A DNA stretch of 64,000 bases from positions 202,491-266,490 of the IMG/VR virus record IMGVR_UViG_3300025930_000007; one strand, written 5' to 3'. The position numbers and the translations under genes are program-made. Under the pieces are notes generated by a model. It was not told the origin of the DNA, did not search any database, and saw only the letters and a list, made by a program, of their open reading frames with translations. Below, piece by piece: positions 5,030 to 42,453 of the stretch (its first letter is position 1; every line of letters begins with the position of its first letter).

Positions 5030-5089
5030 GACCGTCTGGGGGGTGTGACGGCTCAGAGTGATTCTATTCGGCCATCATCCCCAAAGCAA
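5030..5089 (-). promoter_or_regulatory. promoter + C-rich-loop leader hairpin
   Basis: TTGCTT-17-TAGAAT then GCCGTC-ACACCCCCCA-GACGGT. Confidence 0.6.
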
Positions 5090-5091
5090 GC

Positions 5092-5149
5092 TGGCTTTCA
5101 GGATTCGGACAGGATAGACTTTCAGTGGCCTTCCGTCCCCCGGCAGGCC
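5092..5149 (+). promoter_or_regulatory. promoter + C-rich-loop leader hairpin
   Basis: TAGACT (5115-5120) then GGCCTTCCG-TCCCC-CGGCAGGCC. Confidence 0.6.
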
Positions 5150-5184
5150 TTATCCGGCCGTCTTCCGCCCTGATCGGTTGCTCC

Positions 5185-6060
5185 ATGGCGCATAACACGG
5201 CCTCCTTCGATTTTGGAACCTTCCAAGTTCACGTCAAGTATATCGGGCAGCAAGGAGGCTATGCCTACGCCACCAGAATCGAGGTTCCTGGCTATGATCC
5301 GATCGATAGCGGAGTTCTCCTGCCGAGCTTCCCAATTTTCTCCTCCGCAGCGGCAGGGGCCATCGACCAGCTCCGCGAGCTTCTTCAAGTAGGCGTTCCG
5401 GCATACTTGGACGACTGGCGCCAGGCAAGAGGAACTATCAGCTTCAAGGAAGTCCAGGACATGAGGCTCACCTTTCTTTCGTGGAAGGACGCGGCCGCCG
5501 CGCTCGGCGGAGACCAGGCTCTTGCAAATGCGATAAAGCAATTGGAAGCCCAGGAGTTCGCAGAAAAACAGGCGAACTATCCGAAACAAGCGAGACCAAC
5601 TCCAGGCGAGATCCCAGTCGATGTCCAATATGACCTTGGATCTGTCCTCATGGATATGCGCGTAATGGGAATCGTCGAAGGATTCCCCATGTGGCATATC
5701 ACGGCAATCCCTCCCGGAACAGACCTGCAGGCCAGTTCTGTTATTGTCGCGACGTCTCCGTTCTCGCTCCCTATCTCCCAGTTGATGGTGGACAATCTTG
5801 AGGCTGTCCTGAGACAAGGCGTTGAACGTTACCTTCGTGAAGACCCCAGGGCCACCCGCACTCCGGTCACGCCAGAGAAGAGGAGCGCCACGGAAAATCT
5901 CTATGCCGTGGCCAGCTATCTTGGGCCAGAGGGTATCGCTCATGCGGATCAGGCGGTGAAAGATCTGATCCAGGAGAAGCTCGATACCCTTGAAGGGCAG
6001 GCTTTAGAGGCGATGGAAGCTACGATCGCCGAGTACCGGAAACGGAAGCCGAAACTCTAA
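5185..6060 (+). CDS. hypothetical protein (291 aa)
   Basis: long ORF with natural composition, divergent from 4637-5023; start MAHNTASF. Confidence 0.75.
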   Translation: MAHNTASFDFGTFQVHVKYIGQQGGYAYATRIEVPGYDPIDSGVLLPSFPIFSSAAAGAIDQLRELLQVGVPAYLDDWRQARGTISFKEVQDMRLTFLSWKDAAAALGGDQALANAIKQLEAQEFAEKQANYPKQARPTPGEIPVDVQYDLGSVLMDMRVMGIVEGFPMWHITAIPPGTDLQASSVIVATSPFSLPISQLMVDNLEAVLRQGVERYLREDPRATRTPVTPEKRSATENLYAVASYLGPEGIAHADQAVKDLIQEKLDTLEGQALEAMEATIAEYRKRKPKL

Positions 6061-6365
6061 CGCTTCATGATCCGGTCGAGAAGTTCCTTCTTCTCAGGCA
6101 TGTTCATCAGGATCCAGGCGTAGACTGCCTTCCCCATGGCGTTGTCCCATTCCGGGATTTCCGAGAAAGGAAAATCTCCAGTTCCCGTCTCGGAGAATTC
6201 TTTGGCGATCCTGTCCCAAAATGCGCGTTCGGCGACTTCAATCGCGCGACTCATGCGCTCCCGGAAGGCTTCTGCACGCAGACGCAGATCTCGCTCCTGG
6301 GGCGTCTCAGGATGCCCGTTCGTGAGAGGCATTCCTGCTGCGAAAGCGTCATATCCTGAAGCCAT
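6057..6365 (-). CDS. hypothetical protein
   Basis: AFW..IA..F.E..TGDF motif; convergent 4-nt overlap. Confidence 0.7.
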   Translation of the reverse strand: MASGYDAFAAGMPLTNGHPETPQERDLRLRAEAFRERMSRAIEVAERAFWDRIAKEFSETGTGDFPFSEIPEWDNAMGKAVYAWILMNMPEKKELLDRIMKR

Positions 6366-6367
6366 AA

Positions 6368-6517
6368 TTACTTCTTCTTACGGCCCAAGCTGGCCTTGAC
6401 CTTTTCCGCGCAGCGCTTGTACTTCGCTTCGCTCCAGCCCTTCTTCTTCTGCATCGCGCGGCAGACGGCGAAGGCGTTCTTGGCCTGCTTGGCGCCCATG
6501 CTCAGCTTGATCTTCAT
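6368..6517 (-). CDS. small basic protein (49 aa, not in ORF track)
   Basis: GAGG RBS; MKIKLSMGAKQAK...KASLGRKKK. Confidence 0.6.
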   Translation of the reverse strand: MKIKLSMGAKQAKNAFAVCRAMQKKKGWSEAKYKRCAEKVKASLGRKKK

Positions 6518-6535
6518 GTTCTGTTCCTCGTTTTC

Positions 6536-7318
6536 TTAGAGAAGACCCAATAGCCACAGAAGACTGGCGCCGCCGGCGACCGCGCCGCCAGTGTACGCCA
6601 CCGTCTTGATGATCTTGACTCTCCCCATCGCCTCGGCGCACTCCACGGCCTTCCCGGTCACGACGACCTCCCCGTGCGAGATCTCGAACGTAGCCGTGGG
6701 TGGCGCTGTGGCCAAAAACTCCTTCAGTCGCTCCTGGAGTTTGTCGACGATCGGGAACCCGTCCGCCTGAACGATGTCCCGAAGGCATTGCTCGCGCGCC
6801 AATTCCTTGGCAGCCTCTTCGGGAGTCAGAGGACTGAGGACAACCGTGAGAAGATCGGAGAGTTCCTTCGCCTCATTGTAGGTGAGCTGCGTCTTTCCGT
6901 GGAATCCCGTCTTCCCTGGAGGTGTCATCGGAGGTCCTTTGACGGGCTTCGGCGGCAGCGTCATGTTCGGGCACCGAGCCTGGACGGTGCCAGCGACCGC
7001 ATCTTCAGCTTGTCCTGTCTGTTCCGCCTGCTGCCGAACATAGGACCAGAAGATCCGGGAACGAGCGTCATTCTCTTCGTTACTTCCCGCTTGCTCTTCC
7101 GAGAACTTCTTGAGCATGTCGCAGATCCGAGTCTGACGCTGCTCGATCCTTACGGCGTCGTCCGGCCTCTCGGGACGGACAGCGGGCCGTTGGGCAGGTT
7201 TCGGACCTATAGGCATTCCCTTCGCATTCTCGTCCTGGCCCATCCAGGCCCCAGACAGAACAGGATTGATCGGTCGGATGCCCATGGTTCCGAATGCCGA
7301 CTGGTTGAACATGCCCAT
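6536..7318 (-). CDS. orphan protein with MGQ motif and C-terminal TM (putative virion protein)
   Basis: AGGAG RBS; ...GAWMGQDE...; C-terminal GGAVAGGASLLWLLGLL. Confidence 0.75.
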   Translation of the reverse strand: MGMFNQSAFGTMGIRPINPVLSGAWMGQDENAKGMPIGPKPAQRPAVRPERPDDAVRIEQRQTRICDMLKKFSEEQAGSNEENDARSRIFWSYVRQQAEQTGQAEDAVAGTVQARCPNMTLPPKPVKGPPMTPPGKTGFHGKTQLTYNEAKELSDLLTVVLSPLTPEEAAKELAREQCLRDIVQADGFPIVDKLQERLKEFLATAPPTATFEISHGEVVVTGKAVECAEAMGRVKIIKTVAYTGGAVAGGASLLWLLGLL

Positions 7319-7343
7319 CTCCTAAGCCAGAAACTAGCGATGG

Positions 7344-7391
7344 GCCAGAGGAAGGGGGGGGAGAGCCCCTGGCTGAGTCTTCAGGATTTTA
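7344..7391 (-). promoter_or_regulatory. -10 box + C-rich-loop leader hairpin
   Basis: TAAAAT (7386-7391) then GCCAGGGG-(CTCT C8 TT)-CCTCTGGC. Confidence 0.55.
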
Positions 7392-7408
7392 CGACAGAAG
7401 ATTCCGAA

Positions 7409-7840
7409 CTACAAGACTTGCTTCACGTCTTCCATCATAAGCCAGACCGGTGACCCTTCTTCTCCGATGAGGAAGGTGAGCGTCCCATTCCTTGAGATCC
7501 CGCCGACCTGCTCCTTGTTGACGTTTCCATTGCCCATCACGGTCATCTGCAGGCTGGTCTTCTTTCTGGGCACGGAAATGATCTTCTGAATTTCCGATAG
7601 CATCATCTCAGCCGTGAGATTGACTTTGTCCTTGTGATAGACGCGTACTCTGAAGAGATCCTGGTCATGATCAGCCAGAAGGTCTCCTTTGATGACGATG
7701 GGATCTTTCGAGAAGAAGAAGAGCCGGATATCTACAGGCCCGTGCTTTCGGATGCCCTTGTAGATCGGAATGCCGGCCACCGCGGCCGCTGCCATGACGC
7801 CCGCACCTTGGACGAAGTTCCGTCTGGTCAGGTTTCGCAT
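7409..7840 (-). CDS. Tat-signal protein
   Basis: TRRNFVQGAGVMAAAAVAG twin-arginine motif. Confidence 0.7.
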   Translation of the reverse strand: MRNLTRRNFVQGAGVMAAAAVAGIPIYKGIRKHGPVDIRLFFFSKDPIVIKGDLLADHDQDLFRVRVYHKDKVNLTAEMMLSEIQKIISVPRKKTSLQMTVMGNGNVNKEQVGGISRNGTLTFLIGEEGSPVWLMMEDVKQVL

Positions 7841-7847
7841 AGTTCAC

Positions 7848-8132
7848 CTATATAGCTGGAGGAATAGGAGGTGCCGGGGGTGGTGGAATAGGTCCAGGAA
7901 GAGGCCAATCGCGGCCGCAGAGAGGACAATGCTCAGGCTTCGGCATCTCTCCGCCGAACATGATCATCTTCGGGCCTTCACATTTCGAAGGACCTGAGAT
8001 GACACTCTTCTTCCGCTTCCTCTTTCTCCAGAAGGCGATAGCCAGGGTAACCAGGATACTGACCGTAATCGAGCAGAGCGTGAACAGCAAGTCCGCCTTG
8101 AAGACCGTCCAGAACATCGGCTTGTCGTTCAT
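7848..8132 (-). CDS. membrane protein with Pro-rich tail
   Basis: TM followed by basic stretch. Confidence 0.6.
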   Translation of the reverse strand: MNDKPMFWTVFKADLLFTLCSITVSILVTLAIAFWRKRKRKKSVISGPSKCEGPKMIMFGGEMPKPEHCPLCGRDWPLPGPIPPPPAPPIPPAI

Positions 8133-8156
8133 TCTCTACTTCCTATTACGATCCTA

Positions 8157-8345: not shown

Positions 8346-8348
8346 CCT

Positions 8349-9534: not shown

Positions 9535-9541
9535 TCCTGGC

Positions 9542-12830: not shown

Positions 12831-12910
12831 CCCTCACCTTCATTCCGCTTGATTTCAGCCGCCGTATTGGCCTAAAATAGTTCTATAGATTTCTTAGAGG
12901 AGGAGGATTT

Positions 12911-13204
12911 ATGAACAGGAAATCGACCCTCGGCCAAGTCACTGGCGGTGGTCCCTCGGGCGGCGGTCCCTCGGGCGGCGGTCCTTCCGGTGGTCCTACG
13001 GGCGGTCCCACCGGCGGCGGCCCTTCTGATCAGGGCGGCTTCACGGCGCTCACCCCGGGCATGTTCCCCGTGGGTGCGCCCCTCGGCGGCGTGTGCCCCG
13101 CAGGCTACCTGCCTGCGCCCTCGGCGATCGTTCCGGGCGGCTACACCTGCGTGAGGGCGCCGGGAGCGTACACCGTTCCCCTCTACATGGGCCGGCGGCG
13201 GTAA
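12911..13204 (+). CDS. Gly/Pro-rich orphan protein with LGQ and MGRRR motifs
   Basis: GAGGAGGAGG RBS; MNRKSTLGQ, GGGPS repeats, ends PLYMGRRR. Confidence 0.75.
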   Translation: MNRKSTLGQVTGGGPSGGGPSGGGPSGGPTGGPTGGGPSDQGGFTALTPGMFPVGAPLGGVCPAGYLPAPSAIVPGGYTCVRAPGAYTVPLYMGRRR

Positions 13205-13257
13205 GGCTTTCATGATGCCTGGCTCCGCGCGGGAGCCAGGCCGCGGCTCAGGCCATC

Positions 13258-19624: not shown

Positions 19625-19654
19625 AGGTATACCGGTATACCTCTCGAATTGCAA
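19625..19654 (-). promoter_or_regulatory. sigma70-like promoter overlapped by perfect 18-bp palindrome
   Basis: TTGCAA-17-TATACC; AGGTATACCGGTATACCT at 19625-19642. Confidence 0.7.
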
Positions 19655-20799: not shown

Positions 20800-20863
20800 G
20801 TCCCTTTGGGGGAGGGAGGGACCGCCTATCTTGGACTATAACATCCTTGCATCCCCAGATCAA
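20800..20863 (-). promoter_or_regulatory. promoter + C-rich-loop leader hairpin
   Basis: TTGATC-17-TATAGT then GTCCCT-CCCTCCCCCAA-AGGGAC. Confidence 0.65.
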
Positions 20864-22230: not shown

Positions 22231-22765
22231 TTTTCGTTTCCTCAGGGGGTAGGACGAGTTTCATCTCACGATTGGGCGGAACGATGGGAGTCAAATGAAC
22301 TTGCGGTGGTACGGTCCTAGGATCCACTGACGAGTTCATCACCATCATATAAGACCCGGAATATCCAGTCGACCAGTACGAACTGGACATCATCAGTTTC
22401 TGGCCATTCAGGAAGTATTCCGGACGCCCACTGGAATCCGGGATCATCTTATGGTCATGCTTCTGGATCCGGTTGTCCCACCTCATTCCACAGAGAGCGC
22501 ACGTCTCAAAATACGCAAATTCTTCAGCGCAACCCTTACAGGAATGCCAAGTCTTGATGCCGTGCTTGCAGCGAACGGCGGCATCGTTGGCCTTCTGGGA
22601 AGACTTATTGTCCTGAATCTCCTTGATCCAGCCGGCGACCTGGGCGACGAGGATAACGCCTGCCCAGGCAAGCGAGGAGACCGGCTTGATGCCCCGATTC
22701 CAGTCGACCATCATGGCCACCAGCATCACTGGAATCGCTGCATACCAGAACACCAAGTATTTCAT
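22223..22765 (-). CDS. membrane protein with Cys/His motifs
   Basis: two TM, CKHG..C..C. Confidence 0.6.
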   Translation of the reverse strand: MKYLVFWYAAIPVMLVAMMVDWNRGIKPVSSLAWAGVILVAQVAGWIKEIQDNKSSQKANDAAVRCKHGIKTWHSCKGCAEEFAYFETCALCGMRWDNRIQKHDHKMIPDSSGRPEYFLNGQKLMMSSSYWSTGYSGSYMMVMNSSVDPRTVPPQVHLTPIVPPNREMKLVLPPEETKNA

Positions 22766-23772
22766 CCCTTGACCTCGTTCAATACGATTGCCTGACGCAT
22801 CCAGTGCCCATGGGTTTGGACGTGGTTCTTCCTAACGTATTTCGCAACAACATCCTTAAATTCCTTGTACTGGAAGGCCCGTGCGACGCGAACGACGTAA
22901 CCTTCGCAGGGATCTCCGTTGTATAGGTCGATCTCGATGGCCTTCGTCCAACTCTCGTCCCAGAGACCACGATGGAACACGGGCACCGTCTTCAGATCCA
23001 GGAGCGCGCACCAGCTCTCCGTCTCCTCCCAGGAGAGGCATTCGTTCTTCTCGTTCCAGATCGAGAAGACCAGGAAGTGCGCCGGCAGATTCAGGTAATG
23101 GATCGAATGCTTGGCGTAGAGGTTCTCGCCGCAGATCCTCCAACCAGGCGGAATATCATGTCCGATCCGGCGATGCAGGCCCCAGAGCCAGTCCCTGGAG
23201 GGATGCGGCGCCGTGTCGATCGAGCGGGCATGGAAACCATCCGGGTACATGGATGTCTGCTCCCCGTCCATCTTGATCGTGATCACGACCGCCTGGCCCT
23301 CCAGGCCGTGGAGCGATGGGATGATCTTGTCGTCGCTTGAGACGTTCGGGCTCCAGGGAAGGTGATGGGTCCGCTGGTATTTCACCCGATCCGTGAAGAG
23401 GTGCAGGACCGGCTTCAGGATCTTCTGGACGCTCTCGTCATGGAAGAGTTCGCCCTTCAGACGCTGGCCGTTCGGGAGGATCGGATTGCCCCACTTGTCC
23501 ACCGGCTGGTCCGAGTAGAAGTGAGGGGGCAGGAGAACCTCCTGGATCCCGCAGCGCTCCCGGAGCTCGTCGCACGAAAGCTCCGTGGACTCTGCCAGGA
23601 GATGATGGACCTCGCAGACGGAGGCCCCATTCGAGACGTAGTATCCCCCATCGGGCCACAGTCGGCGTTCGATGATGTGGTGAGCATCCTTCGCCGGCTG
23701 CCCGCAGACAACGCATTCCCAGCCGTCTCGCTTGAAGACGGCATTCCTGAACTCGTCTCTACTTAGCAACAT
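22762..23772 (-). CDS. HNH domain + ATP-dependent RNA ligase fusion
   Basis: VFKRDG..CVVC..AHHI..NG..VC..HH; KY.RT.HLPWS, KMDGE, CGEN, EGYVVR, KYVR. Confidence 0.88.
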   Translation of the reverse strand: MLLSRDEFRNAVFKRDGWECVVCGQPAKDAHHIIERRLWPDGGYYVSNGASVCEVHHLLAESTELSCDELRERCGIQEVLLPPHFYSDQPVDKWGNPILPNGQRLKGELFHDESVQKILKPVLHLFTDRVKYQRTHHLPWSPNVSSDDKIIPSLHGLEGQAVVITIKMDGEQTSMYPDGFHARSIDTAPHPSRDWLWGLHRRIGHDIPPGWRICGENLYAKHSIHYLNLPAHFLVFSIWNEKNECLSWEETESWCALLDLKTVPVFHRGLWDESWTKAIEIDLYNGDPCEGYVVRVARAFQYKEFKDVVAKYVRKNHVQTHGHWMRQAIVLNEVKG

Positions 23773-25596: not shown

Positions 25597-25625
25597 ATGG
25601 TATTCTTGGTTTACCTCTTAGTCAA
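25597..25625 (-). promoter_or_regulatory. sigma70-like promoter with GGTAAACC half-site
   Basis: TTGACT-17-TACCAT. Confidence 0.55.
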
Positions 25626-26014: not shown

Positions 26015-27187
26015 ATGCCTTACGTTTTAGCCGACGGGAGAGGCCAGAAGATCGGGCTCTATACCACCTGCCTGGATATCTCGTATGCCCAGGCCGAACT
26101 CCTTCTCATGGTCGAGAAGGCGAAACTCGATCATCCTGACGCGTTCATCGTAGGCTACGCAGATTCTCAGCTCCAGATCTCCGTCGAACGCTTCCTTGAG
26201 CCTCACAAGCAGTATCCCAAGGAACTGGAGAGAATCGAGGAACTCCGGTCCAAGATCAAGGCCAAGGGAATGCATTCCTTCACCGTCCGTCATTTCGACG
26301 ATGACTGGGAAACGTTCCTGAAGTCGAAGCCTCTCCTCCAGATCGGCCGCTGCATCGACAGCGTGGTCAATCAGATGGTGGATTTCAAGGCCAAGGGCAA
26401 AGACGAAGAAGTCGCCGAAATGGTCGAAGACATTTTCGCCAATCCCTTGCATGCCGGCATCCATCAGGACTTCCCACCTACCGTCTCCGACGAAATCTGG
26501 ATTGCGGATGCCGCCAAATCCATCCGCAGGATCACTCCGGAGAAGTGGCTGAGAAGACTCCTGCATGTTATGCGCTTCTATTTCAAAGGAAAGCCGAAGA
26601 TCGCCCTTCCCCATAAGAATGACCGCTGTCCTTGCGGCAGCAGCAAGAAATACGGCAAGTGCTGTGGTTACGGCGTCGAGCACGAGGACCCGGAAAACTG
26701 CAAACTCGGGATGCATCAGTTCACGATGTGGGAAGAAGTCGATGGCAAGTTCATCCGAACCTGCGAGAAGTGCTTCAGGGTCTACGAAGCTCCATGGTTT
26801 GAGGAAGTCGATTATGATGGAGTAGACATCCTGGTCATTGGCTGCCGGGCCTGCGCTGAAAAACCGACTGACGAAGACTTCGCTCGGGAAATGGAGGAAG
26901 CCCAGAAATGGCATATCTGCGGCTCATGCATGAAGCCATTCGGGCTAAGGCATATCATCCTCGAGCACACCTGGTCCGATGGAAAGCACATCGGCCATTG
27001 GAAAGGGACTGAGATCGATACCAAAGAGGAAGCCGTCGATCTTCAGTCGATCGGACTAGGAAAGGGAGTGTTCCTTCACAAGGAATGCTTCATGAAGGCA
27101 ATTCCAGGCTGGCCCAAATCGGCCAAGCCATCCGGCAGAGGACCGGCCAAGGAAATCATGCGGGATATTACGCCTACTGCGAGTTGA
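26015..27187 (+). CDS. SEC-C motif-containing multi-Zn protein
   Basis: NDRCPCGSSKKYGKCCG plus further CxxC. Confidence 0.75.
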   Translation: MPYVLADGRGQKIGLYTTCLDISYAQAELLLMVEKAKLDHPDAFIVGYADSQLQISVERFLEPHKQYPKELERIEELRSKIKAKGMHSFTVRHFDDDWETFLKSKPLLQIGRCIDSVVNQMVDFKAKGKDEEVAEMVEDIFANPLHAGIHQDFPPTVSDEIWIADAAKSIRRITPEKWLRRLLHVMRFYFKGKPKIALPHKNDRCPCGSSKKYGKCCGYGVEHEDPENCKLGMHQFTMWEEVDGKFIRTCEKCFRVYEAPWFEEVDYDGVDILVIGCRACAEKPTDEDFAREMEEAQKWHICGSCMKPFGLRHIILEHTWSDGKHIGHWKGTEIDTKEEAVDLQSIGLGKGVFLHKECFMKAIPGWPKSAKPSGRGPAKEIMRDITPTAS

Positions 27188-28753: not shown

Positions 28754-28799
28754 GAGAAAAAACCATTTCGGGCGGAATGAGTTCTACCGGACCTTTAGA

Positions 28800-28856
28800 C
28801 CGCCCAGGGGGACTGGACGGACAGCTTAATCATACCGCTTAACCTTGGGACTTCAA
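28800..28856 (-). promoter_or_regulatory. promoter + C-rich-loop leader hairpin
   Basis: TTGAAG-16-TATGAT then CCGTCCAG-TCCCC-CTGGGCGG. Confidence 0.65.
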
Positions 28857-30584: not shown

Positions 30585-30628
30585 CCGCGGCGGGGGAGGG
30601 TGAGCTGCGGCAAGAAGAAGATACCATA
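30585..30628 (-). promoter_or_regulatory. -10 box + C-rich-loop leader hairpin
   Basis: TATGGT then CCGCAGC-TCACCCTCCCCC-GCCGCGG. Confidence 0.6.
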
Positions 30629-30635: not shown

Positions 30636-30697
30636 TGGACTAACAAGCCACTACAAGCTATGATTCTGGGAGCGGCAACACCCTCCCCCTCGCCGCT
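30636..30697 (+). promoter_or_regulatory. promoter + C-rich-loop leader hairpin
   Basis: TGGACT-17-TATGAT then AGCGGC-AACACCCTCCCCCTC-GCCGCT. Confidence 0.65.
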
Positions 30698-34606: not shown

Positions 34607-34652
34607 GTTAAACGAGTTTACTGCTCCTCGTTTTTCATGTCAAGCTATGCGT

Positions 34653-35151: not shown

Positions 35152-35211
35152 CTGGTCGCCGGGGGAAGCGACCGGACAGCCTGATTATACTTTGAGCCCA
35201 GGCGATCTCAA
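35152..35211 (-). promoter_or_regulatory. promoter + C-rich-loop leader hairpin
   Basis: TTGAGA-16-TATAAT then GGTCGC-TTCCCCCG-GCGACC. Confidence 0.7.
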
Positions 35212-35465: not shown

Positions 35466-35530
35466 TTGACTGCGGTATCGGGCGGCGGTAGATTCTGGTT
35501 GTCCGCCCGACGCTGCCCTCCCCAGGCAGC
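35466..35530 (+). ncRNA. candidate small RNA / orphan promoter + C-rich-loop hairpin
   Basis: TTGACT-17-TAGATT then GCTGCC-CTCCCCA-GGCAGC with no plausible + gene downstream. Confidence 0.4.
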
Positions 35531-35541
35531 CCCAGAAGTAT

Positions 35542-36684
35542 CTAGATCTTCACTCCAGGATTCGGAATCGTCCCGCGCTCCAAGCTCTCATCCGAGGTGA
35601 TTCCGAACTCCTGCTCGAGGGCCCGAACAAGATTGCTGGCGTTGTCGGGAAGATCCGCCATCTTCAGCATTTGAGGCCAGAACGGACCGAAGGCATAGAA
35701 TCCAGCGATGGGCACTGCGTCGATCATCGACATCGTAGGATTCGGCTTCAAGACCCATGCCGTCCGGACACCTGCGGCGCCGCCGGTGAACTGCCCATTG
35801 GCGACATACCCGGTCCCGATCAACCCAGGGATGCCGTGATGGATTCTCTGGATCATTCTCCAGAAGCCTTCCCGCAATTTCTCATGTTGCGGGTCTCCAC
35901 GTTTCCGCGCTCCCTCAAGAGTCGGGATCATGGTCACGTACGGCATCTCGATCGGCTCGACCACTTCAAAGTAGGGAAGATCCTGGCCGAGGCCGGCGAG
36001 CGCAAGAGCTCTCTTCCAACCTTCATCGGCAACTGCGGGATATTTCAATCCTTCCTTCTGGATCGAATGAGCGATCTTCTGGACGGCCGGGCTATCCATC
36101 ATTCTCATCAGCTTCGGGCCATAGTGCTTTTCGAGAAGCCGGACGACTTCCTGATGAGGAACGAGCAGAAAGCGGAAGTGCATGGTTTCTGGCTTTCGTC
36201 CGAAGTGAGCCTCGAAGTCCGCCGTCTGCCGGAGCGCGTCTTTCTGGCTAAGGGATGGAAGCTCTAAGAAGGAGTACGTGTCTCCAGGCGCGTAACAGCG
36301 TCTCTCGAAGATGACTCCATCGCAGCTATCCACCCTTCCCAAGGATCCCGACAGCACCATCTCCCTGCCCCAATCCCCCTCGTTTTCCAGGGTCCAGGCA
36401 ATCGACTTGGAACCATATTCGGCCGCGAGCGGCCGGGGGCCTTCGGGAGTCTGTGTCATGACGACGATCTTGCCGTCGGGATCCTCTTCCCACCAGAAGT
36501 CAAAGGCCGAGAGGTACTTCCGGAGACTTTCGGATCCGGATTTGGTCTCTCTGCGAGCCAGAGCCGAGACATGCTCGATCCTGAAGGTATGCTGTCCCCG
36601 GACGAGGACTAGATCCGGTTTCAGGTAAGCAAGCTCAGCCAGGACGTTGGCCAGAGGCCGCCTTTGACTCGGCCTATGCGCCAT
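35542..36684 (-). CDS. orphan multidomain protein
   Basis: 380-aa ORF; possible degenerate ParB-like middle segment; LSGSLGR linker. Confidence 0.7.
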   Translation of the reverse strand: MAHRPSQRRPLANVLAELAYLKPDLVLVRGQHTFRIEHVSALARRETKSGSESLRKYLSAFDFWWEEDPDGKIVVMTQTPEGPRPLAAEYGSKSIAWTLENEGDWGREMVLSGSLGRVDSCDGVIFERRCYAPGDTYSFLELPSLSQKDALRQTADFEAHFGRKPETMHFRFLLVPHQEVVRLLEKHYGPKLMRMMDSPAVQKIAHSIQKEGLKYPAVADEGWKRALALAGLGQDLPYFEVVEPIEMPYVTMIPTLEGARKRGDPQHEKLREGFWRMIQRIHHGIPGLIGTGYVANGQFTGGAAGVRTAWVLKPNPTMSMIDAVPIAGFYAFGPFWPQMLKMADLPDNASNLVRALEQEFGITSDESLERGTIPNPGVKI

Positions 36685-36690: not shown

Positions 36691-36837
36691 CTATTTCTTT
36701 CCCAGTGTCTTCCGGGCTACGCAGGACGCGACCTTCTTGCGCTGCTGGGGCGTCCAAGGCTTCCCGGGCTTGATGCCGACGTCGCGGGCGCAGGAGGATG
36801 TGAGGCGCAGCTTGAGGGGGAGGGTTCTCTTCGCCAT
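36691..36837 (-). CDS. small basic protein (48 aa, not in ORF track)
   Basis: AGGA RBS; MAKRTLPLKLRL...RKTLGKK. Confidence 0.6.
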   Translation of the reverse strand: MAKRTLPLKLRLTSSCARDVGIKPGKPWTPQQRKKVASCVARKTLGKK

Positions 36838-38310: not shown

Positions 38311-38347
38311 AGTTCAGTCCTAACTCTAACCTTAAAGCCGCGATCCT

Positions 38348-38746
38348 TCAAGTGTGAAAGAAGTACTTCACGCCGGCGATCGCTCCTGGAAGGCTCGGCG
38401 TCGGGAGTTTCGAGGGCAAAAACCACCCGTAACGGTCGTGTTCATCGTTGAGGACCGGCTCCCAGGCATCCCCAGAAGCGTCCATTTGCGCCAGGAAGAG
38501 CGCAAAGGCGAAGAAGGGGTTCGGAGCCCACCATACGGGCTCTGTGTCGATATAGAGCTTCGGCAGGCCTCCAAGCTCCTCGCGTCCCTCCCGAAGGGCC
38601 GCCTCGAGGTGTGTCTCGCCTGGTTCAACACTGCCTCCCGTAAAATCCCAGTATCCCGGGCTGCTTTCTGCCGCGGATCTCCGCGTCATAAGAACCTTAC
38701 CGTCCCTGGGACGGAGGATCAGGAGACCCGCGCCATTTTCGCTCAT
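38348..38746 (-). CDS. NUDIX hydrolase
   Basis: GGSVEPGETHLEAALREGREELG Nudix box. Confidence 0.9.
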   Translation of the reverse strand: MSENGAGLLILRPRDGKVLMTRRSAAESSPGYWDFTGGSVEPGETHLEAALREGREELGGLPKLYIDTEPVWWAPNPFFAFALFLAQMDASGDAWEPVLNDEHDRYGWFLPSKLPTPSLPGAIAGVKYFFHT

Positions 38747-39196: not shown

Positions 39197-39200
39197 CGCA

Positions 39201-40346
39201 TCAGGACGTCTGAGAGATCAGAGCATCCAGGTCCTCATCTCCGTTGATTGTGTTGTACCAGGTCAGCGCGGAATCCTGTTCCTCGAAGAGAACCTCGTGC
39301 TGCCAGGGCTGTCCTCCAAAGGGATCGATTCGTTCGATCTTGAGGACCCAGTTGTTCGTTCGGTCTTCCTCTGGAGAAAGGAGTTCCAGGTTGATATAGC
39401 CGACTTTCCTTTTCGAGCTTCCCAGCTCGATCAGCATTTCGGCTCCCATGGTGGCCTTCTTCTTTTTCGGACGATCCTTGAAGCTCCGTTCCTCCGGAGT
39501 ATGGTAATCGACGCCCAGGAAGTCGTAGAAATCCCGTTCGTCTGCGGATTGGAGAAGAGGCTCGCCAGTTTTAGCGTCCCAGATGCCGTATTGGTCTAGT
39601 TTCCATCCACGGCGCTTGGCGATCGAGCGCATGGCGATATTGTGCTGCCAATCGCCCGTGTACATAAAAAGCATCGCGCCGAGCTCGTCGACCTTGTGGG
39701 CGATATAGAGCTCGACGGGGACGCCGTCCATGATCTTCTTCTGAATTCTTTCCCCGCCCTCATAGCCCAGCTTCTTGAGGTGAAGCAATAGGCCTTCGAC
39801 ATCGCCGTCCTTGGGTAGGATCACCAGCTCGACATCGCCAATCTGAGGCCGCTGCCGGCGGATCGACCCTGCTACCAGAGCTACCTGAACGTACTTCTCG
39901 ATTTCTCTCAAGACCCGGGTGGCGAGCTTCTGAGCTTTCGTAAGAGGAATAGTGCTCTTCACGCGCCGGCCCATTTCGATCAGCATCTCAGCGCCCATGG
40001 CCGCTTTACCACTCTTCTGAGGCGTGATCGAGACGAAGGCGCCGCTGGGAGGATCACCGATCAGGATCGAAACACCGTCATCCGAATACTTCTCCCAAAG
40101 CTCGATATGGGCATTCCACCGAGCCGTGGCATCGCCTTCAGTCTGGCATCCGATGGTATGACTCGCTACCCAATAACCGACGGCGACACCGCTGTCGCCG
40201 CAGGCATTGACGTCCCTTTCGGCTTCCCGAAGAAGCTTCCAAGCCGCCGCCTGGGTCATGATCGGAAGCTCTTCGAAGTTCATTGATTGTAGACGACTCT
40301 TCCCTGAGGCAAGCTGAAGGAGGTTCTCTTCTTCTTCCGCTTGCAC
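39201..40346 (-). CDS. polX: minimal DNA polymerase X domain embedded in multidomain protein
   Basis: AGSIRR...GDVELV, TGD.QHN..MR..A...G.KL.QYG, E...Y..LG..Y..PEER. Confidence 0.85.
   Translation of the reverse strand: MQAEEEENLLQLASGKSRLQSMNFEELPIMTQAAAWKLLREAERDVNACGDSGVAVGYWVASHTIGCQTEGDATARWNAHIELWEKYSDDGVSILIGDPPSGAFVSITPQKSGKAAMGAEMLIEMGRRVKSTIPLTKAQKLATRVLREIEKYVQVALVAGSIRRQRPQIGDVELVILPKDGDVEGLLLHLKKLGYEGGERIQKKIMDGVPVELYIAHKVDELGAMLFMYTGDWQHNIAMRSIAKRRGWKLDQYGIWDAKTGEPLLQSADERDFYDFLGVDYHTPEERSFKDRPKKKKATMGAEMLIELGSSKRKVGYINLELLSPEEDRTNNWVLKIERIDPFGGQPWQHEVLFEEQDSALTWYNTINGDEDLDALISQTS
39421..40000 (-). repeat. 31-nt direct repeat (39421-39451 and 39970-40000) encoding MGAEMLIE(M/L)G, flanking PolX
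   Basis: 26/31 identical; differences mostly synonymous. Confidence 0.85.
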
Positions 40347-41242
40347 TTCTTGCAGCCGATGACGTGATTGGGATTCATTTCGTCATGGAGTTCGATAGGA
40401 CCCAAGGGCACTGCTTCGGATCCAAGGAATCCACCGCCAGGATAAACCATCTTGATCGAGATTGGGCTCGAGACGATGGCCGGTGTGCTGTCATCACGGT
40501 TCCGGTACACGTTGACCGCAACACTGACGGTCTGAGGGAACCAGAAGTTGATGGGATTCGAGAGCAGCGTTTCATTCCGTACATCACCAGCCGGAACCGT
40601 CATAAGCTTCATGCCGACTTCACTGGGTTCCGGCTTCGACTTGAAGACGACCTGCCCTTCGTCATCCCGGATTTCCAGTCCGACGAAGAACGAGAGAGGA
40701 TCCTTCCCCTGATTCCGAATGGAGAAGGCAAACGGCTGGTCGATCAGCATGTTGCGAACTGTGCCGCCCGTCCGATCCTGCCGCGGATCGAGCATGATGC
40801 TGAGCCTGCTGGCCAGCCAGCCCGGAGGCTCATTGGGAACAGGGTTATTCGACGACGGCGGCAGGATGCTGCTTCCGGTCGGAGATGGAGGTTCCGGCGC
40901 AGCCGGCTCCTGGAAGAGGAAGTAAAGACCGGCGGCGATCCCGGCGACGGCGCCCGCATAAGCAGCAGGCTTCCAGTCCTGAGAAAACGTCTCGGACAGA
41001 TAGTAGGACGTGAGGCCGCCTCCGATCAAGGCCGAAGCCAGCCCGAGGTTCTTCTTGTTGATCGGGACGTCCGGAACAGCCTTCGCCACGATCAGCGACG
41101 CCAGATAAGCGCCGCCGGCCCAGGCGATGAACGGCAAGCCGAACCGGATCAGGATAGGAACCGCTGCTTGAACCTGACCAAGGTGCAGTCTTGGCCCATT
41201 CCCGAGCATCGGAACCTTTTTGGCTGGCTTCCACTTGGTCAT
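40280..41242 (-). CDS. multi-TM orphan protein with LGQ motif and beta-rich C-terminal domain
   Basis: AGGAG RBS; RLHLGQVQ; 3 TMs; beta-sandwich-like tail. Confidence 0.7.
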   Translation of the reverse strand: MTKWKPAKKVPMLGNGPRLHLGQVQAAVPILIRFGLPFIAWAGGAYLASLIVAKAVPDVPINKKNLGLASALIGGGLTSYYLSETFSQDWKPAAYAGAVAGIAAGLYFLFQEPAAPEPPSPTGSSILPPSSNNPVPNEPPGWLASRLSIMLDPRQDRTGGTVRNMLIDQPFAFSIRNQGKDPLSFFVGLEIRDDEGQVVFKSKPEPSEVGMKLMTVPAGDVRNETLLSNPINFWFPQTVSVAVNVYRNRDDSTPAIVSSPISIKMVYPGGGFLGSEAVPLGPIELHDEMNPNHVIGCKKCKRKKKRTSFSLPQGRVVYNQ

Positions 41243-41249
41243 ATAGCTC

Positions 41250-41450
41250 CTATTGCCATTTCTCTTGTTCTTTTTCGTAGGCTTCCCAGAACGGAACCGT
41301 GTATTGCCCGCTATCGGGGCTGAGCGGCAGGCCCTGGCAGCGCGGACAGCCCATGACGTGCCGCACGTCGCGCTGATCGTGAACTGTGACCGTCCCGAGG
41401 CGGATCTGTGGACGATCAAGAGGATTCCAGACCACTCGTACTTGTCTCAT
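41250..41450 (-). CDS. small Cys-containing protein
   Basis: ATGA overlap; QIRLGT, CPRC. Confidence 0.55.
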   Translation of the reverse strand: MRQVRVVWNPLDRPQIRLGTVTVHDQRDVRHVMGCPRCQGLPLSPDSGQYTVPFWEAYEKEQEKWQ

Positions 41451-41713
41451 CGGCACGACCTCTTTGCGTTCTTCTTGAGTTTCCCCCAAACTACGGTCAC
41501 ATGATTCCCGCGCTTCTGACTCCGGAAGGTGCGGAAACAGGTCTTCGGCCGCTGCACCACCCGGAAGGATCCCGGCGTTTCGATCGTGATCCTGGCTTCC
41601 TTCCGAGAGTGCCGTTCCGCGATCATGCCGGCTTCTTCCTTCGAATGGACGAAGGGATGGGTCTTCTTCACGACGACCGCCTGTTCGACCCAGACCTTCT
41701 TCGGCTTGGCCAT
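41447..41713 (-). CDS. small basic protein
   Basis: ET..SFR..QRP..CF..FR motif. Confidence 0.65.
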   Translation of the reverse strand: MAKPKKVWVEQAVVVKKTHPFVHSKEEAGMIAERHSRKEARITIETPGSFRVVQRPKTCFRTFRSQKRGNHVTVVWGKLKKNAKRSCR

Positions 41714-41715
41714 CA

Positions 41716-42204
41716 TTATCTCCGAAGGATCAGGCAGAGCCGGCCCCAGAAACGAGCCAGTTGATTCCTGTCTTGGATCACCATGGCGTAGTTCTTCTTG
41801 AAGTCTGCCATGTCCCCCGAAGCGAGCGCCAGGATGTAACCGCCGGTCGCGGTCACATGGGTGAGGAAGAGTTTCTCGAACTCCTGCTTCGGGAAACCCG
41901 GGATCTCGCTCTCGTAAAGCCTGGTCTGATCGTTCGCATTCAGGATCAGGGCTTCGACCGCGGCATCGACCGTACCTTGGTCCTTGGCGAACGCGGCGTC
42001 CGTGAGCTGCTTCACCAGGGCGATGTGCTGGTTCATGAGCCGGGTGGCGTCAGGGATCTTGAGGAGATCTCCCCATTCCTCGGCGCCTTCGACGAGCTTA
42101 TTGACGGCATTCGCCTGCATCCGGGCATCTTTCTGGTTCGTCGCCGCGACGTACATGTACGTCTCGCCGACGTGATCGAACCACCAGGTTGCGCAGTCAG
42201 CCAT
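41716..42204 (-). CDS. His-containing four-helix-bundle protein
   Basis: W.DH, LM.QHI, LF.THV repeated helices. Confidence 0.65.
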   Translation of the reverse strand: MADCATWWFDHVGETYMYVAATNQKDARMQANAVNKLVEGAEEWGDLLKIPDATRLMNQHIALVKQLTDAAFAKDQGTVDAAVEALILNANDQTRLYESEIPGFPKQEFEKLFLTHVTATGGYILALASGDMADFKKNYAMVIQDRNQLARFWGRLCLILRR

Positions 42205-42398
42205 TACCGGCCCTTTCTGGCTTTCTTGACCATCTGAATCATTCGTTCCTGACGAAGGGCGCTCCTCTTACTCCTATGGCGCCCAAGGAGAAGACGAGGC
42301 TTCTTCTTGGAATAGAGGCAGATGGGAAAGCCGGGCTTCTTGTCGCCAGAATAGCAGGGCTTGATGATGCCCAACTGAAGACGGATTCCCCCAGGCAT
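42204..42398 (-). CDS. small basic protein
   Basis: AAGGAG RBS; LYSKK...LG.H.S...A..QER. Confidence 0.65.
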   Translation of the reverse strand: MPGGIRLQLGIIKPCYSGDKKPGFPICLYSKKKPRLLLGRHRSKRSALRQERMIQMVKKARKGR

Positions 42399-42418
42399 GA
42401 AACGGCTCCTTGAAAGCT

Positions 42419-42453
42419 GAAGGCACGGGGGGAGTACCCTCGCCGATATTATG
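42419..42453 (-). promoter_or_regulatory. -10 box + C-rich-loop leader hairpin
   Basis: CATAAT then GAGGGTAC-TCCCCCC-GTGCCTTC (2 G-U pairs). Confidence 0.65.

What the first reader, a model, noticed from the sequence alone, without database searches (positions are those of the whole stretch)
5030..42453. Recurrent promoter-proximal RNA hairpin with an invariant C-rich loop (10 copies)
Seen in sequence: ten stem-loops sit 5-17 nt downstream of a TAnnnT-type -10 box (one is CATAAT), most with a TTGnnn -35 at 16-17 nt. Positions: 5030-5052(-), 5127-5149(+), 7344-7373(-), 20800-20822(-), 28800-28820(-), 30585-30610(-), 30671-30697(+), 35152-35175(-), 35512-35530(+), 42419-42441(-). Stem sequences are unrelated yet pair, often with G-U pairs that work only on the sense strand, while the loop always contains CCCC (TCCCC, CCCTCCCCC, TCACCCTCCCCC). 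Two divergent promoter pairs (5.0 kb, 30.6 kb) each carry one copy per direction. Inference: an undescribed 5'-leader RNA element defining a regulon. It could be a binding site for a viral late activator or antiterminator (boxB-like), or a loop that pairs with G-rich/SD sequences; the 30.6 kb loop resembles the 16S anti-SD UCACCUCC.
Basis: partly seen in the sequence, partly recalled or inferred. Interest (0 to 1): 0.92.

Follow-up and report, generated by a model that had tools for sequence, protein, structure and literature searches.

The report
C-loop hairpins behind phage promoters
At least a dozen transcripts of an uncultivated giant phage appear to begin with a small RNA hairpin whose loop is a run of cytosines; relatives keep the hairpin through compensatory mutations, it matches no described RNA family, and it probably tags one class of phage messages for protection or recognition.

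Summary
All ten sites carry a sigma70-type promoter (TTGnnn/TGGnnn-N16-18-TAnnnT), a 6-nt discriminator, a purine, then a 5-10 bp hairpin whose loop holds a C4-C8 run.

Hairpins with C-run loops are not rare by themselves. The promoter+hairpin composite is rare: 6 observed vs 0.07 expected, and 0 for G-run loops.

The window is the end of a 266-kb IMG/VR jumbo-phage contig. Two more copies lie 12-14 kb to its left.

Relatives down to 51% ligase identity keep the element. One orthologous site shows five different stems with the same C-loop, and covariation beats every shuffle. G.U versus A.C pairs (9:1) and the fixed orientation point to the transcribed RNA.

There is no Rfam hit, U-tract, boxA or GNRA loop. 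The loop pairs no better with its own SD than with other leaders. A second promoter class (GTAwACCGGTAwAmC) lacks the hairpin.

Best reading: a 5'-terminal leader hairpin marks the host-sigma70 (probably early) transcript class. The stem buries the 5' end. The C-run, often with a second motif UUCCGCCC, is a handle for an unidentified factor. The mechanism is inferred, not shown. This is a new RNA motif of a known general kind.

The parts
5028..5089 (-). s1 cassette: TTGCTT-17-TAGAAT promoter (5061-5089) plus hairpin GAGCCGUC/ACACCCCCCA/GACGG(U)CUC (5028-5054); one half of a divergent pair
   Evidence: MFE -15.8 kcal/mol, z -4.2, +1 paired
5092..5149 (+). s2 cassette: TGGCTT-17-TAGACT promoter plus hairpin GGCCUUCCG/UCCCC/CGGCAGGCC (5127-5149); the gene probably starts at ATG 5185
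   Evidence: the other half of the divergent pair
5163..5170 (+). second leader motif UUCCGCCC, 14 nt after the s2 hairpin
7344..7414 (-). s3 cassette: TTGTAG-17-TAAAAT promoter plus hairpin GCCAGGGG/CUCUCCCCCCCCUU/CCUCUGGC (7344-7373)
20800..20863 (-). s4 cassette: TTGATC-17-TATAGT promoter plus hairpin GUCCCU/CCCUCCCCCAA/AGGGAC (20800-20822; an outer AGGC/GCCU extension is possible)
   Evidence: in a 50-nt context the fold competes with an SD hairpin
28798..28856 (-). s5 cassette: TTGAAG-16-TATGAT promoter plus hairpin CCGUCCAG/UCCCC/CUGGGCGG (28800-28820)
   Evidence: orthologs have five different stems
28770..28777 (-). second leader motif UUCCGCCC in the s5 leader, just before the start codon region
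   Evidence: conserved in L009, L011, L013
30585..30646 (-). s6 cassette: TTGTTA-17-TATCTT promoter plus hairpin CCGCAGC/UCACCCUCCCCC/GCCGCGG (30585-30610); divergent from s7
30636..30697 (+). s7 cassette: TGGACT-17-TATGAT promoter plus hairpin AGCGGC/AACACCCUCCCCCUC/GCCGCU (30671-30697); leader of the DNA ligase operon
35152..35211 (-). s8 cassette: TTGAGA-16-TATAAT promoter plus hairpin GGUCGCU/UCCCCC/GGCGACC (35152-35175)
   Evidence: the L010 ortholog has a shifted stem register
35466..35530 (+). s9 cassette: TTGACT-17-TAGATT promoter, leader GUCCGCCCGAC (contains the second motif), then hairpin GCUGCC/CUCCCCA/GGCAGC (35512-35530); the transcript is antisense to the 3' end of gene 35542-36684(-)
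   Evidence: conserved in all seven close relatives, with a register shift in L011/L013
42419..42476 (-). s10 cassette: TAGACT-17-CATAAT promoter plus hairpin GAGGGUAC/UCCCCCC/GUGCCUUC (42419-42441); heads the ~7-kb operon that contains Pol X and NUDIX

Best explanation
The element is a cis-acting RNA hairpin at the 5' end of the transcripts made from one promoter class of a jumbo phage. These are the host-sigma70-type promoters, which are probably the early ones.

Transcription most likely starts at the purine 7 nt after the -10 box. In most copies that purine is the first or second base of the stem, so the nascent 5' triphosphate end is buried in a 5-10 bp helix. This is the geometry known to block 5'-end-dependent decay (RppH, the RNase E 5' sensor, RNase J).

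The loop always displays a single-stranded run of 4-8 cytosines at its 3' side, usually preceded by U. Five of the twelve leaders also carry a second C-rich single-stranded patch, UUCCGCCC. I propose that these C-patches are the recognition handle for a trans-acting factor. This factor is most likely a protein, phage- or host-encoded, and it reads the tag to set the stability or time window of this transcript class. The idea is comparable to how T4 RegB singles out early mRNAs, or how poly(C)-binding proteins hold the C-rich loop and C-rich spacer at the 5' end of picornavirus RNA.

Shown: the anatomy, the link to the promoter class, the conservation, the covariation and the strand bias.
Inferred: the start sites, 5'-end protection, the existence of a factor, and early timing.
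For: Anatomy:
- Aligned on the -10 box, there is a 6-nt discriminator, then a purine (G in 8 of 10), and the stem begins 0-3 nt later in 7 of 10 window copies.
- In 50-nt context folds the hairpin is the MFE structure in 11 of 12 leaders, and +1 is paired in 7. Mean z is -1.5; combined z is about -5.2 (my arithmetic).

Specificity:
- The composite is 6 observed vs 0.07 expected; G-loop control is 0.
- About 200 kb of unrelated phage loci have none.

Class restriction:
- Hairpin-less promoters with GTAwACCGGTAwAmC / TTGACa-17-TAwACy form a separate class.

RNA-level selection:
- One orthologous site (s5) has five different stems with the same C-loop. 87.5% of cells are paired, 0 of 500 shuffles reach that, 4 of 8 pairs show double changes, and slid controls give 35-55%.
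- s7 orthologs down to 51% ligase identity are 93.8% paired, with a C-G to A-U swap.
- s9 and s8 keep the loop through stem register shifts.
- Pair types are 9 G.U vs 1 A.C (P=0.011). Loops are 73% C and 2% G.

Second C-rich motif: present in 5 of 12 leaders and in a distant relative.

Literature: 5'-terminal stem-loops stabilise mRNA, and RppH needs at least 2 unpaired 5' nt (PMC3997798).

Gain and loss: promoter and hairpin are gained or lost together in relatives (s8 is absent in L009, s5 is absent in L010).
Against: - No transcription start site is mapped.
- s3, s8 and s9 would leave 4-11 unpaired 5' nt, so end protection cannot be universal.
- 5' stabilisers described so far need no particular loop, and poly-C loops are thermodynamically penalised, so stabilisation alone does not explain the invariant part.
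- No candidate binding protein was found. The Pfam survey of 112 window proteins shows no KH, S1, Sm, CSD or N/Q domain. The conserved small basic proteins have no family or fold match.
- Distant motif-bearing genomes share almost nothing but the ligase with the window over the 11-13 kb fetched from each, so no phage-encoded partner could be nominated there; a host factor would have to be widespread.
- Early timing is inferred only from promoter type and gene content.
Confidence: 0.45

Rival explanations
1. The C-rich loop acts by base pairing with G-rich RNA. It would work either in cis, as an anti-SD mimic that masks the gene's own ribosome-binding site, or in trans like the C-rich seed loops of the actinobacterial 6C sRNA or S. 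aureus RNAIII. In the trans case the 5' hairpins (and the stand-alone s9 RNA) would target host or phage SD regions.
For: - C-rich loops are established seeds against G-rich targets (PMC6486639).
- s8 (UCCCCC vs SD GGGGGGA, kept in L010) and s10 (UCCCCCC vs GGGGGA at codon 3) have strong cis partners (-12 kcal/mol; only 4% of control start regions do as well).
- Loops of s3, s4, s6 and s7 contain CUCC/CCUCC, complementary to GGAG(G).
- s9 is a conserved promoter+hairpin with no ORF, as expected for an sRNA.
Against: - Own-leader pairing is no better than pairing with other leaders (cis mean -7.6 vs trans -7.4 kcal/mol, permutation P=0.31).
- For 6 of 10 sites, at least 47% of control genes pair as well.
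- s1, s2, s5 and s9 have no SD or G-run downstream.
- G-runs are not enriched at translation starts (7-8% vs 5.8% expected).
- There is no 6C or other Rfam match.
- At s6 the linker to the SD is only 4 nt, too short for a pseudoknot across a 7-bp stem.
Confidence: 0.15
2. The hairpin is a boxB-like or put-like loading site on the nascent RNA. It would recruit a phage factor, or act directly on RNA polymerase, to make elongation processive or termination-resistant.
For: - It is promoter-proximal and strand-specific, with a variable stem and an invariant loop. This is the logic of N-boxB recognition (own knowledge).
- Several small, very basic proteins of unknown function are encoded in the same region: a 48-aa protein (pI 11.5) that is 81-98% conserved, and a 64-aa protein (pI 11.5) that is the first gene behind s10.
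- Some tagged operons are long (s10 heads about 7 kb).
Against: - Loops are 5-15 nt and C-rich, not GNRA-like pentaloops.
- No boxA-like sequence occurs in any leader.
- Terminator-like sites are not enriched in the region (14 vs 17.1 expected) and few lie inside the tagged operons.
- Ten to twelve sites, many heading units of 1-3 genes, is unlike the one or two nut/put/qut sites of known systems.
- No N/Q/antitermination family was detected.
- nut sites do not need to start at +1.
Confidence: 0.12
3. The element works at the DNA level. It could be a promoter+palindrome cassette that spreads and recombines like the PeSL elements of T4-type phages. Alternatively it could be an initial-transcribed-region effect (a G-run in the template strand at +9 to +20 modulating promoter escape), or a hairpin/cruciform recognised by a DNA-binding protein.
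For: - PeSLs are strong sigma70-like promoters joined to stem-loops, scattered in ORFan-rich regions of large phage genomes (PMC2839356).
- Here the cassettes also head ORFan genes, are gained and lost as units, and some are paralogous.
- Antisense folds are as stable as sense folds.
Against: - In PeSLs it is the stem (polyG/polyC) that is conserved, and the stem-loop lies mostly inside or upstream of the promoter, acting as a terminator. Here the loop is conserved, the stems turn over by compensatory change, and the hairpin is downstream of +1.
- Shared sequence between cassettes is too short for homologous recombination.
- G.U (9) vs A.C (1) pairs and the strict co-orientation with the promoter (12 of 12) favour RNA. 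Stems with two G.T pairs would be poor DNA hairpins.
- A pure G-run effect does not require a stem.
Confidence: 0.1
4. The hairpins are attenuators or terminators, or 3'-end protectors. They would act on transcription that reads through from upstream units, or at s9 on the convergent 7-kb operon. Their position after a promoter would be incidental.
For: - Canonical U-tract terminators are scarce in this region.
- Five copies (s3, s4, s5, s8, s10) lie between tandem genes, where upstream transcripts would run through them.
- s9 sits 12 nt beyond the stop codon of the convergent operon.
Against: - None is followed by a U-tract, and none is called by the terminator scan.
- Both divergent pairs (s1/s2, s6/s7) have no upstream transcription to stop.
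- Orientation always follows the adjacent promoter rather than the upstream gene (for example s9).
- A terminator placed at +1 to +25 would also act on the promoter's own transcripts.
Confidence: 0.08

Closest known systems
5'-terminal stabilising stem-loops of bacterial and phage mRNAs (ompA, papA and similar; reviewed in PMC3997798)
   Same: A hairpin at or within 0-3 nt of the predicted +1 in most copies. The stem sequence is free to vary. The element sits on the mRNAs of many unrelated genes.
   Different: Known stabilisers have no conserved loop. Here a C4-C8 run is invariant, an accessory C-rich motif occurs, the element is restricted to one promoter class, and three copies would leave 4-11 unpaired 5' nt.
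PeSL (promoter-early stem-loop) cassettes of T4-type phages (PMC2839356, PMC4122927)
   Same: A strong sigma70-like promoter is physically joined to a stem-loop. The cassette is repeated in intergenic regions of ORFan-rich parts of a large phage genome and is gained and lost with the downstream gene.
   Different: The PeSL stem-loop has a conserved polyG/polyC stem, lies mostly between or over the -35 and -10 boxes or upstream, and works as a terminator. Here the stem is variable, the loop is conserved, the hairpin is transcribed from +1, and there is no terminator signature.
lambda-type nut boxB hairpins (N antitermination) and HK022 put RNAs (own knowledge)
   Same: A promoter-proximal nascent-RNA hairpin in which the loop carries the specificity and the stem only has to pair. 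Divergent promoters each carry a copy.
   Different: The loop is not a GNRA-like pentaloop. There is no boxA and no recognisable N protein. There are 12 or more copies instead of 2. The hairpin starts at +1. There is no set of terminators to overcome.
C-rich-loop regulatory RNAs: actinobacterial 6C sRNA (Rfam 6C; PMC6486639) and UCCC loops of S. aureus RNAIII/Rsa RNAs
   Same: Hairpin loops made of a cytosine run, presented single-stranded. s9 is a stand-alone promoter+hairpin without an ORF.
   Different: There is a single hairpin at the 5' end of mRNAs rather than a two-hairpin sRNA. There is no Rfam match at E<=5. No enrichment of G-rich partners was detected.
Poly(C)-binding-protein sites at the 5' end of picornavirus RNA (cloverleaf stem-loop B plus C-rich spacer; own knowledge, cf. 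PMC6380274 found)
   Same: A works-like analogy only. A 5'-terminal structure displays a C-rich loop next to a second C-rich single-stranded patch, and together they are bound by a protein that protects the viral RNA.
   Different: It comes from a eukaryotic RNA virus with KH-domain host proteins. There is no homology, and no bacterial or phage poly(C)-binding protein was identified here.

Membership tests
Any Rfam family (including 6C, RF01066) | Covariance-model match at the gathering score, or at least E<=5 | tested here: not met
   cmscan of the whole window: 0 hits at gathering. The only 2 chance hits at E<=5 lie elsewhere.
6C sRNA | Two adjacent hairpins, each with a loop of at least 6 cytosines, as a free-standing sRNA | tested here: not met
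   There is a single hairpin per site, loops have C4-C8, and 11 of 12 copies are mRNA leaders.
lambda-type nut site (boxA + boxB) | boxB hairpin with a 5-nt GNRA-like purine-rich loop | tested here: not met
   Loops are 5-15 nt, 73% C and 2% G.
lambda-type nut site (boxA + boxB) | boxA (CGCUCUUUA-like) next to the hairpin | tested here: not met
   No GCTCTT/CTCTTTA in any of the 12 leaders.
lambda-type nut site (boxA + boxB) | Cognate N-type arginine-rich protein and downstream terminators that are read through | tested here: inconclusive
   No antitermination family among 112 proteins. Small basic proteins exist but are uncharacterised. Terminator-like sites are not enriched.
PeSL cassette (T4-type phages) | Strong sigma70-like promoter joined to a stem-loop in intergenic, ORFan-rich regions | tested here: met
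PeSL cassette (T4-type phages) | Stem-loop with a conserved polyG...polyC stem, placed within or upstream of the promoter hexamers | tested here: not met
   Stems are unrelated or drift by compensation. The hairpin begins 6-17 nt after the -10 box (definition from PMC2839356).
PeSL cassette (T4-type phages) | Stem-loop functions as a transcription terminator or attenuator | not testable with these tools
   No U-tract is present and no site is called by the terminator scan. Functional assays are needed.
5'-terminal mRNA stabiliser stem-loop | Stem begins within about 0-2 nt of the 5' end of the transcript | tested here: inconclusive
   With +1 predicted 7 nt after the -10 box, +1 is paired in 7 of 12 and at most 2 nt are free in 8 of 12. 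s3, s8 and s9 leave 4-11 nt free. Start sites are not mapped.
5'-terminal mRNA stabiliser stem-loop | Removal shortens mRNA half-life | not testable with these tools
   Requires reporter and half-life assays.
Intrinsic (Rho-independent) terminator | GC-rich hairpin followed by a U-tract | tested here: not met
   None of the sites is among the 14 terminator-like hits in 24-43 kb. The flanks show no T-run.
N4-type hairpin promoters for virion RNA polymerase (own knowledge) | 5-7 bp DNA hairpin with a 3-nt loop upstream of the start site, with no sigma70 hexamers | tested here: not met
   Loops are 5-15 nt. Each hairpin lies downstream of a sigma70-type -35/-10 pair.

The most novel reading that the evidence does not exclude
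The C-run loop and the UUCCGCCC patch together form a new kind of 'self' tag on phage messages. The tag would be read by a dedicated C-specific RNA-binding factor of unknown fold, a bacterial-virus counterpart of the poly(C)-binding-protein/5'-cloverleaf system. Through it, a clade of soil jumbo phages would distinguish their sigma70-class transcripts from host mRNA, for protection during host mRNA destruction or for timed shut-off. The conserved ORF-less s9 RNA, which carries both motifs in its first 35 nt, would act as a titrating decoy. A still bolder variant is that the two patches mimic segments of the 3' minor domain of 16S rRNA. CCGCCCG is identical to the universal 1400-region string and CACCCUCC resembles the anti-SD (both from my own knowledge), so the tag might capture a ribosome-biogenesis or translation factor.
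Probability: 0.2. Interest if true: 0.85.

Novelty: new variant of a known kind. Interest (0 to 1): 0.62.

Why it matters
Cis-acting 5' leader hairpins are a known kind of element. One with an invariant cytosine-run loop has not been described. This one is tied to a single promoter class and has been kept by compensatory evolution across phages whose proteins have diverged to about 50% identity.

It gives a compact, testable handle on gene-expression control in uncultivated jumbo phages, almost all of whose proteins are of unknown function. Specifically:
- it predicts which transcription units belong together;
- it offers a bait for finding a new RNA-binding factor;
- if it stabilises or insulates transcripts, it could serve as a portable 5' part for expression design.

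The contrast with a second, hairpin-less promoter class also sketches the temporal programme of a phage that cannot yet be grown.

Tried and rejected
- Chance or compositional artefact: rejected by the composite statistic, by intergenic enrichment, by negative-control phage loci and by covariation.
- Known RNA family: none found.
MAFFT cannot align hairpins with unrelated stems and loops of 5-15 nt in register (A4). A 5-6 bp plus C-run model carries too little information to be significant in 128 kb, since raw C-loop hairpins are common. I used a descriptor plus promoter score with shuffles instead.
- Loop pairs with own SD or start region: no cis preference.
- G-run trans targets at start codons: none found.
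- Terminator reading: no U-tracts.
- boxA search: negative.
- Partner protein by domain survey: nothing.
- Partner protein by co-occurrence in distant motif-bearing genomes: only the ligase is shared.
- Partner protein by modelling the unusually conserved 48-aa basic protein: a two-helix hairpin (pLDDT 80) with no PDB sequence or fold match.
- Relatives in INPHARED phages, GTDB genomes and other IMG/VR contigs: none.
- Fishing IMG/VR with the 14-mer GTCCGCCCGACGCT: 120 or more chance hits, and only the two known contigs carry the real context.
- Host identification: not achieved. TAnnnT -10 boxes, some leaderless-looking starts and strong GGAGG SDs are only weak hints.

Full report
WHAT THE WINDOW IS. 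The window is the last 64 kb of a 266,490-bp IMG/VR contig (UViG_3300025930_000007). The same sequence occurs in a 236,090-bp contig (UViG_3300005544_000020). So this is an uncultivated jumbo phage with 57% G+C. Almost all genes are on the minus strand. Very few proteins match PHROGs or Pfam. Recognisable ones are an ATP-dependent DNA ligase, Pol X, an SNF2 helicase, a C5 methyltransferase, an RNA ligase, Thg1-like, RlaP, NUDIX and HD proteins, and sugar-modifying enzymes. There is no megablast match in deposited phages and no tRNA.

CHECK OF THE OBSERVATION. Each is preceded by a sigma70-type promoter. The -35 hexamer is TTGnnn in seven sites and TGGCTT, TGGACT or TAGACT in three. The spacer is 16-18 nt and the -10 box is TAnnnT (CATAAT once). 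An independent consensus scanner finds five of these promoters. The loop holds CCCC in 10/10 and UCCCC in 9/10.

Taken alone, such hairpins are not unusual. Simple stems around TCCCC or CCCC are fewer than in dinucleotide shuffles (31 vs 64), because C-runs are depleted in this genome. A permissive energy-based scan finds about 150 of them. What is unusual is the combination. A clean C-loop hairpin within 3-20 nt of a promoter scoring >=15 occurs 6 times vs 0.07 expected (maximum 1 in 60 shuffles). At >=14 it is 7 vs 0.53. The mirror-image control with G-run loops gives 0 (stricter version: 5 vs 0.37). Clean C-loop hairpins are enriched in the 8% of the window that is intergenic (8 of 28, P=0.0014), and every intergenic one is a listed site. 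Seen from the promoter side, 10 of roughly 20 intergenic sigma70-like promoters carry the hairpin.

ANATOMY. Aligned on the -10 box, every copy has a 6-nt discriminator followed by a purine (G in 8 of 10). That is where a sigma70 holoenzyme would be expected to start (established knowledge; not mapped here). In seven window copies the stem begins 0-3 nt from that base. Folding the first 50 nt of each predicted transcript gives the C-loop hairpin as the minimum-energy structure in 11 of 12 cases, with nucleotide +1 itself paired in 7. Individual z-scores are modest (-0.04 to -4.2, mean -1.5).

Over 24 distinct copies from this phage and its relatives, stems are 5-10 bp. They contain 158 Watson-Crick pairs, 9 G.U, 1 A.C and 1 other. 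Loops are 5-15 nt with 73% C, 17% U, 8% A and 2% G. The C-run sits at the 3' side of the loop, 0-3 nt from the stem. None is followed by a U-tract, and none is called as a terminator.

SPREAD IN THE GENOME. Walking along the contig found two further copies 11.6 and 14.3 kb left of the window. They are L152 13742-13770 (GAAGGCCU/UCCCUCCCCCAUU/AGGCCUUC behind TTGAAG-17-TATAGT) and L152 16360-16384 (GGCCUUCCAG/UCCCC/CUGGAGGGUC behind TTGAAA-17-TATCCT). There are none in the next 9.6 kb to the left, none in window 42.5-64 kb, and none in the 9.8 kb beyond the window in the other contig. That makes 12 copies within about 57 kb of the about 102 kb I could read. The arms of s2, s5 and the two new copies are related, so some cassettes are diverged duplicates.

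RELATIVES AND COVARIATION. The ligase behind s7 has many relatives in metagenome assemblies. I fetched syntenic loci at 83, 81, 74, 71, 62 and 56% ligase identity (L021, L009, L023, L010, L011/L012, L013). I also fetched more distant ones at 51-53% with 58-63% G+C (L025/L026, L027, L028).

- The divergent s6/s7 promoter-hairpin pair is present in all close relatives, nearly base for base.
- In the distant relatives a TAnnnT promoter plus C-loop hairpin still precedes the ligase, and in L025 and L027 also the divergent gene. The stems there are altered, for example GCGGC/GCCGC becomes GCGGA/UCCGC.
- Site 5 has five different stems at one orthologous position: CCGUCCAG, CCUUCCAGG, GCCAUCCAG, GGGUUUCUUG and CGGUUUCCU. 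All present UCCCC, CCCCCC or CCCCCA. On the MAFFT alignment, 87.5% of cells pair (0 of 500 shuffles reach this), 4 of 8 pairs show changes on both sides, and sliding the partner by 1-3 columns drops pairing to 35-55%.
- The s7 set gives 93.8% paired, against 21-69% when slid.
- At s9 (L011/L013) and s8 (L010) the stem has shifted register while the loop stays.
- Promoter and hairpin disappear together where they are absent (s8 in L009, s5 in L010).
- Unrelated phage loci fetched as by-products (about 200 kb) and distant helicase or kinase relatives have no such composite.
- No relatives exist in the GTDB representative genomes or elsewhere in IMG/VR.

RNA OR DNA, AND WHICH STRAND. Three facts favour the transcribed RNA. 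The orientation is fixed relative to the adjacent promoter in 12 of 12 copies, including both divergent pairs. G.U pairs outnumber A.C pairs 9 to 1 (P=0.011). The position is at +1. Folding energies do not discriminate between strands; the antisense is as stable or slightly more so. The one conserved A.C mismatch (s6) is an exception.

A SECOND PROMOTER CLASS AND A SECOND LEADER MOTIF. Hairpin-less promoters of the form TTGACa-N17-TAwACy share a GTAwACCGGTAwAmC element. It occurs at 3 loci vs 0 expected and is conserved in L009. Half of these promoters lack the canonical -7 T. They look like a separate, possibly phage-specific class, which makes the hairpin a mark of the host-type class.

Five of the 12 leaders also contain UUCCGCCC or GUCCGCCC. 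It lies downstream of the hairpin in s2, s5 and both new copies, and upstream of it in s9. It is kept in the orthologs and seen twice in the distant L025. The 8-mer is not over-represented in the window as a whole (5 vs 4.6 expected), but 3 of the 5 occurrences lie inside cassettes.

MECHANISM. The anatomy fits a 5'-terminal leader hairpin. A stem that buries the 5' end is the classic way to block 5'-end-dependent decay, and RppH needs at least two unpaired 5' nucleotides (PMC3997798). That explains the +1 position and the free stem sequence, but not the invariant C-run, which is if anything thermodynamically unfavourable. An invariant single-stranded loop on a variable stem is the signature of recognition by a trans-acting partner.

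I tested the RNA-partner version. Loops pair with their own leader no better than with other leaders or with control start regions (permutation P=0.31). Only s8 and s10 have strong G-run partners. Three or four leaders have no SD. G-runs are not concentrated at start codons. The antitermination version lacks boxA, GNRA loops, N/Q-type proteins and terminators to overcome.

I therefore favour the following model. The stem protects the 5' end. The C-patches are a handle for a protein that sets the stability or time window of this (probably early) transcript class. This works like T4 RegB's selective attack on early mRNAs, or like the poly(C)-binding-protein grip on the C-rich loop plus C-rich spacer at the 5' end of picornavirus RNA. 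These are analogies, not membership.

No candidate protein could be named. The unusually conserved 48-aa basic protein (36691-36837) and its paralog model as a two-helix hairpin without any match. Confidence that the element is a real, selected, RNA-level 5' leader feature is about 0.85-0.9. Confidence in the specific two-part mechanism is 0.45.

COMPARISON WITH KNOWN SYSTEMS. The nearest described phage element is the PeSL cassette of T4-type phages. It is a sigma70-like promoter joined to a stem-loop and repeated in ORFan-rich regions. However, there the polyG/polyC stem is the conserved part, the stem-loop sits inside or upstream of the promoter, and it terminates upstream transcription (PMC2839356, PMC4122927). 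Three defining features are not met here. The element also fails the tests for boxB/nut, 6C RNA, intrinsic terminators and N4-type hairpin promoters (see the membership table). It is best filed as a new variant of the general kind 'cis-acting 5' leader hairpin', with no family assignment.

LIMITS. No start site, half-life or binding has been measured. The host is unknown. Only about 40% of the genome was read. My gene calls are home-made. The orthologous alignments are small (5-8 sequences), so the shuffle controls overstate significance somewhat, as the tool itself warns. The slid-partner controls and the complete turnover of the s5 stem are the more robust evidence.

Noticed in passing
window 3730-3744(-), 19626-19641(both), 52116-52130(-); related promoters at 25597-25625(-), 34615-34643(-), 58823-58851(-): A second promoter class without hairpin, TTGACa-N17-TAwACy. 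Its spacer and -10 region form a direct repeat GTAwACCGGTAwAmC (3 loci vs 0 expected; conserved in L009 at 721). Half of them lack the -7 T of sigma70 promoters, so this may be a phage-specific (middle or late?) promoter or an operator.
   Followed up: partly
window 5163-5170(+), 28770-28777(-), 35502-35510(+), 42463-42470(-); L152 leaders after 13770 and 16384; L025 58(+) and 5789(-): A second C-rich leader motif, (U/G)UCCGCCC(G/U), accompanies the C-loop hairpin in 5 of 12 leaders and in a distant relative. In SD-less leaders (s2, s5) it lies 12-20 nt before the AUG. The string CCGCCCG equals the universal 16S 1400-region sequence (own knowledge). Meaning unknown.
   Followed up: partly
window 36691-36837(-) and 6368-6517(-): A 48-aa protein (pI 11.5) is conserved at 81-98% where its neighbours are at 40-80%, and it has a 49-aa paralog. 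AlphaFold gives a two-helix hairpin (pLDDT 80). No Pfam, PHROG, PDB-sequence or fold match. It could be a nucleic-acid-binding protein.
   Followed up: yes
window 35466-35560(+): Site 9 is a fully conserved promoter+leader+hairpin with no ORF. It fires into the 3' end of the convergent 7-kb operon, so it is a candidate antisense RNA or sRNA. Its complement would also put a G-loop hairpin 12 nt after that operon's stop codon.
   Followed up: partly
window 22762-23772(-), 38348-38746(-), plus unlocated Thg1, RlaP and HD_4 hits: An RNA-repair or RNA-end-modifying gene set (RNA ligase, Thg1-like 3'-5' polymerase, RlaP nucleotidyltransferase, NUDIX, HD) lies in the same region as the tagged promoters. 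A NUDIX RppH-like activity would make 5'-paired phage transcripts selectively resistant. This is speculation.
   Followed up: no
window 34607-34652(-) and 52334-52382(-): The start codons lie only about 7-8 nt after the -10 box, so these mRNAs look leaderless. Together with TAnnnT -10 boxes this hints at a host in which leaderless translation is common. The host was not identified.
   Followed up: no
window about 58865-58908(-): One of the few canonical intrinsic terminators (GGCCUGGGCAG...CUGCUCAGGCC followed by UUUUUUAUU). It lies between two genes with very strong codon bias (58945-59739 and 58209-58778). Elsewhere, convergent genes overlap without any terminator (6057-6060, 27174-27187).
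   Followed up: no
window 12831-13257: A 427-bp 'gap' in the minus-strand gene array holds a plus-strand ORF (12911-13204) behind a TTGATT-18-TAAAAT promoter and a GGAGGAGG SD. The DNA contains short tandem GGACCGCCGCCCGAG-type repeats, so the protein would be repetitive and low-complexity.
   Followed up: no
L025/L026, L027, L028 (metagenome contigs of 12-100 kb, 58-63% G+C): Phages that share little more than the ligase with the window still use the C-loop hairpin at several promoters (three copies within 13 kb of L025). The motif is therefore older and wider than the window's own clade.
   Followed up: partly
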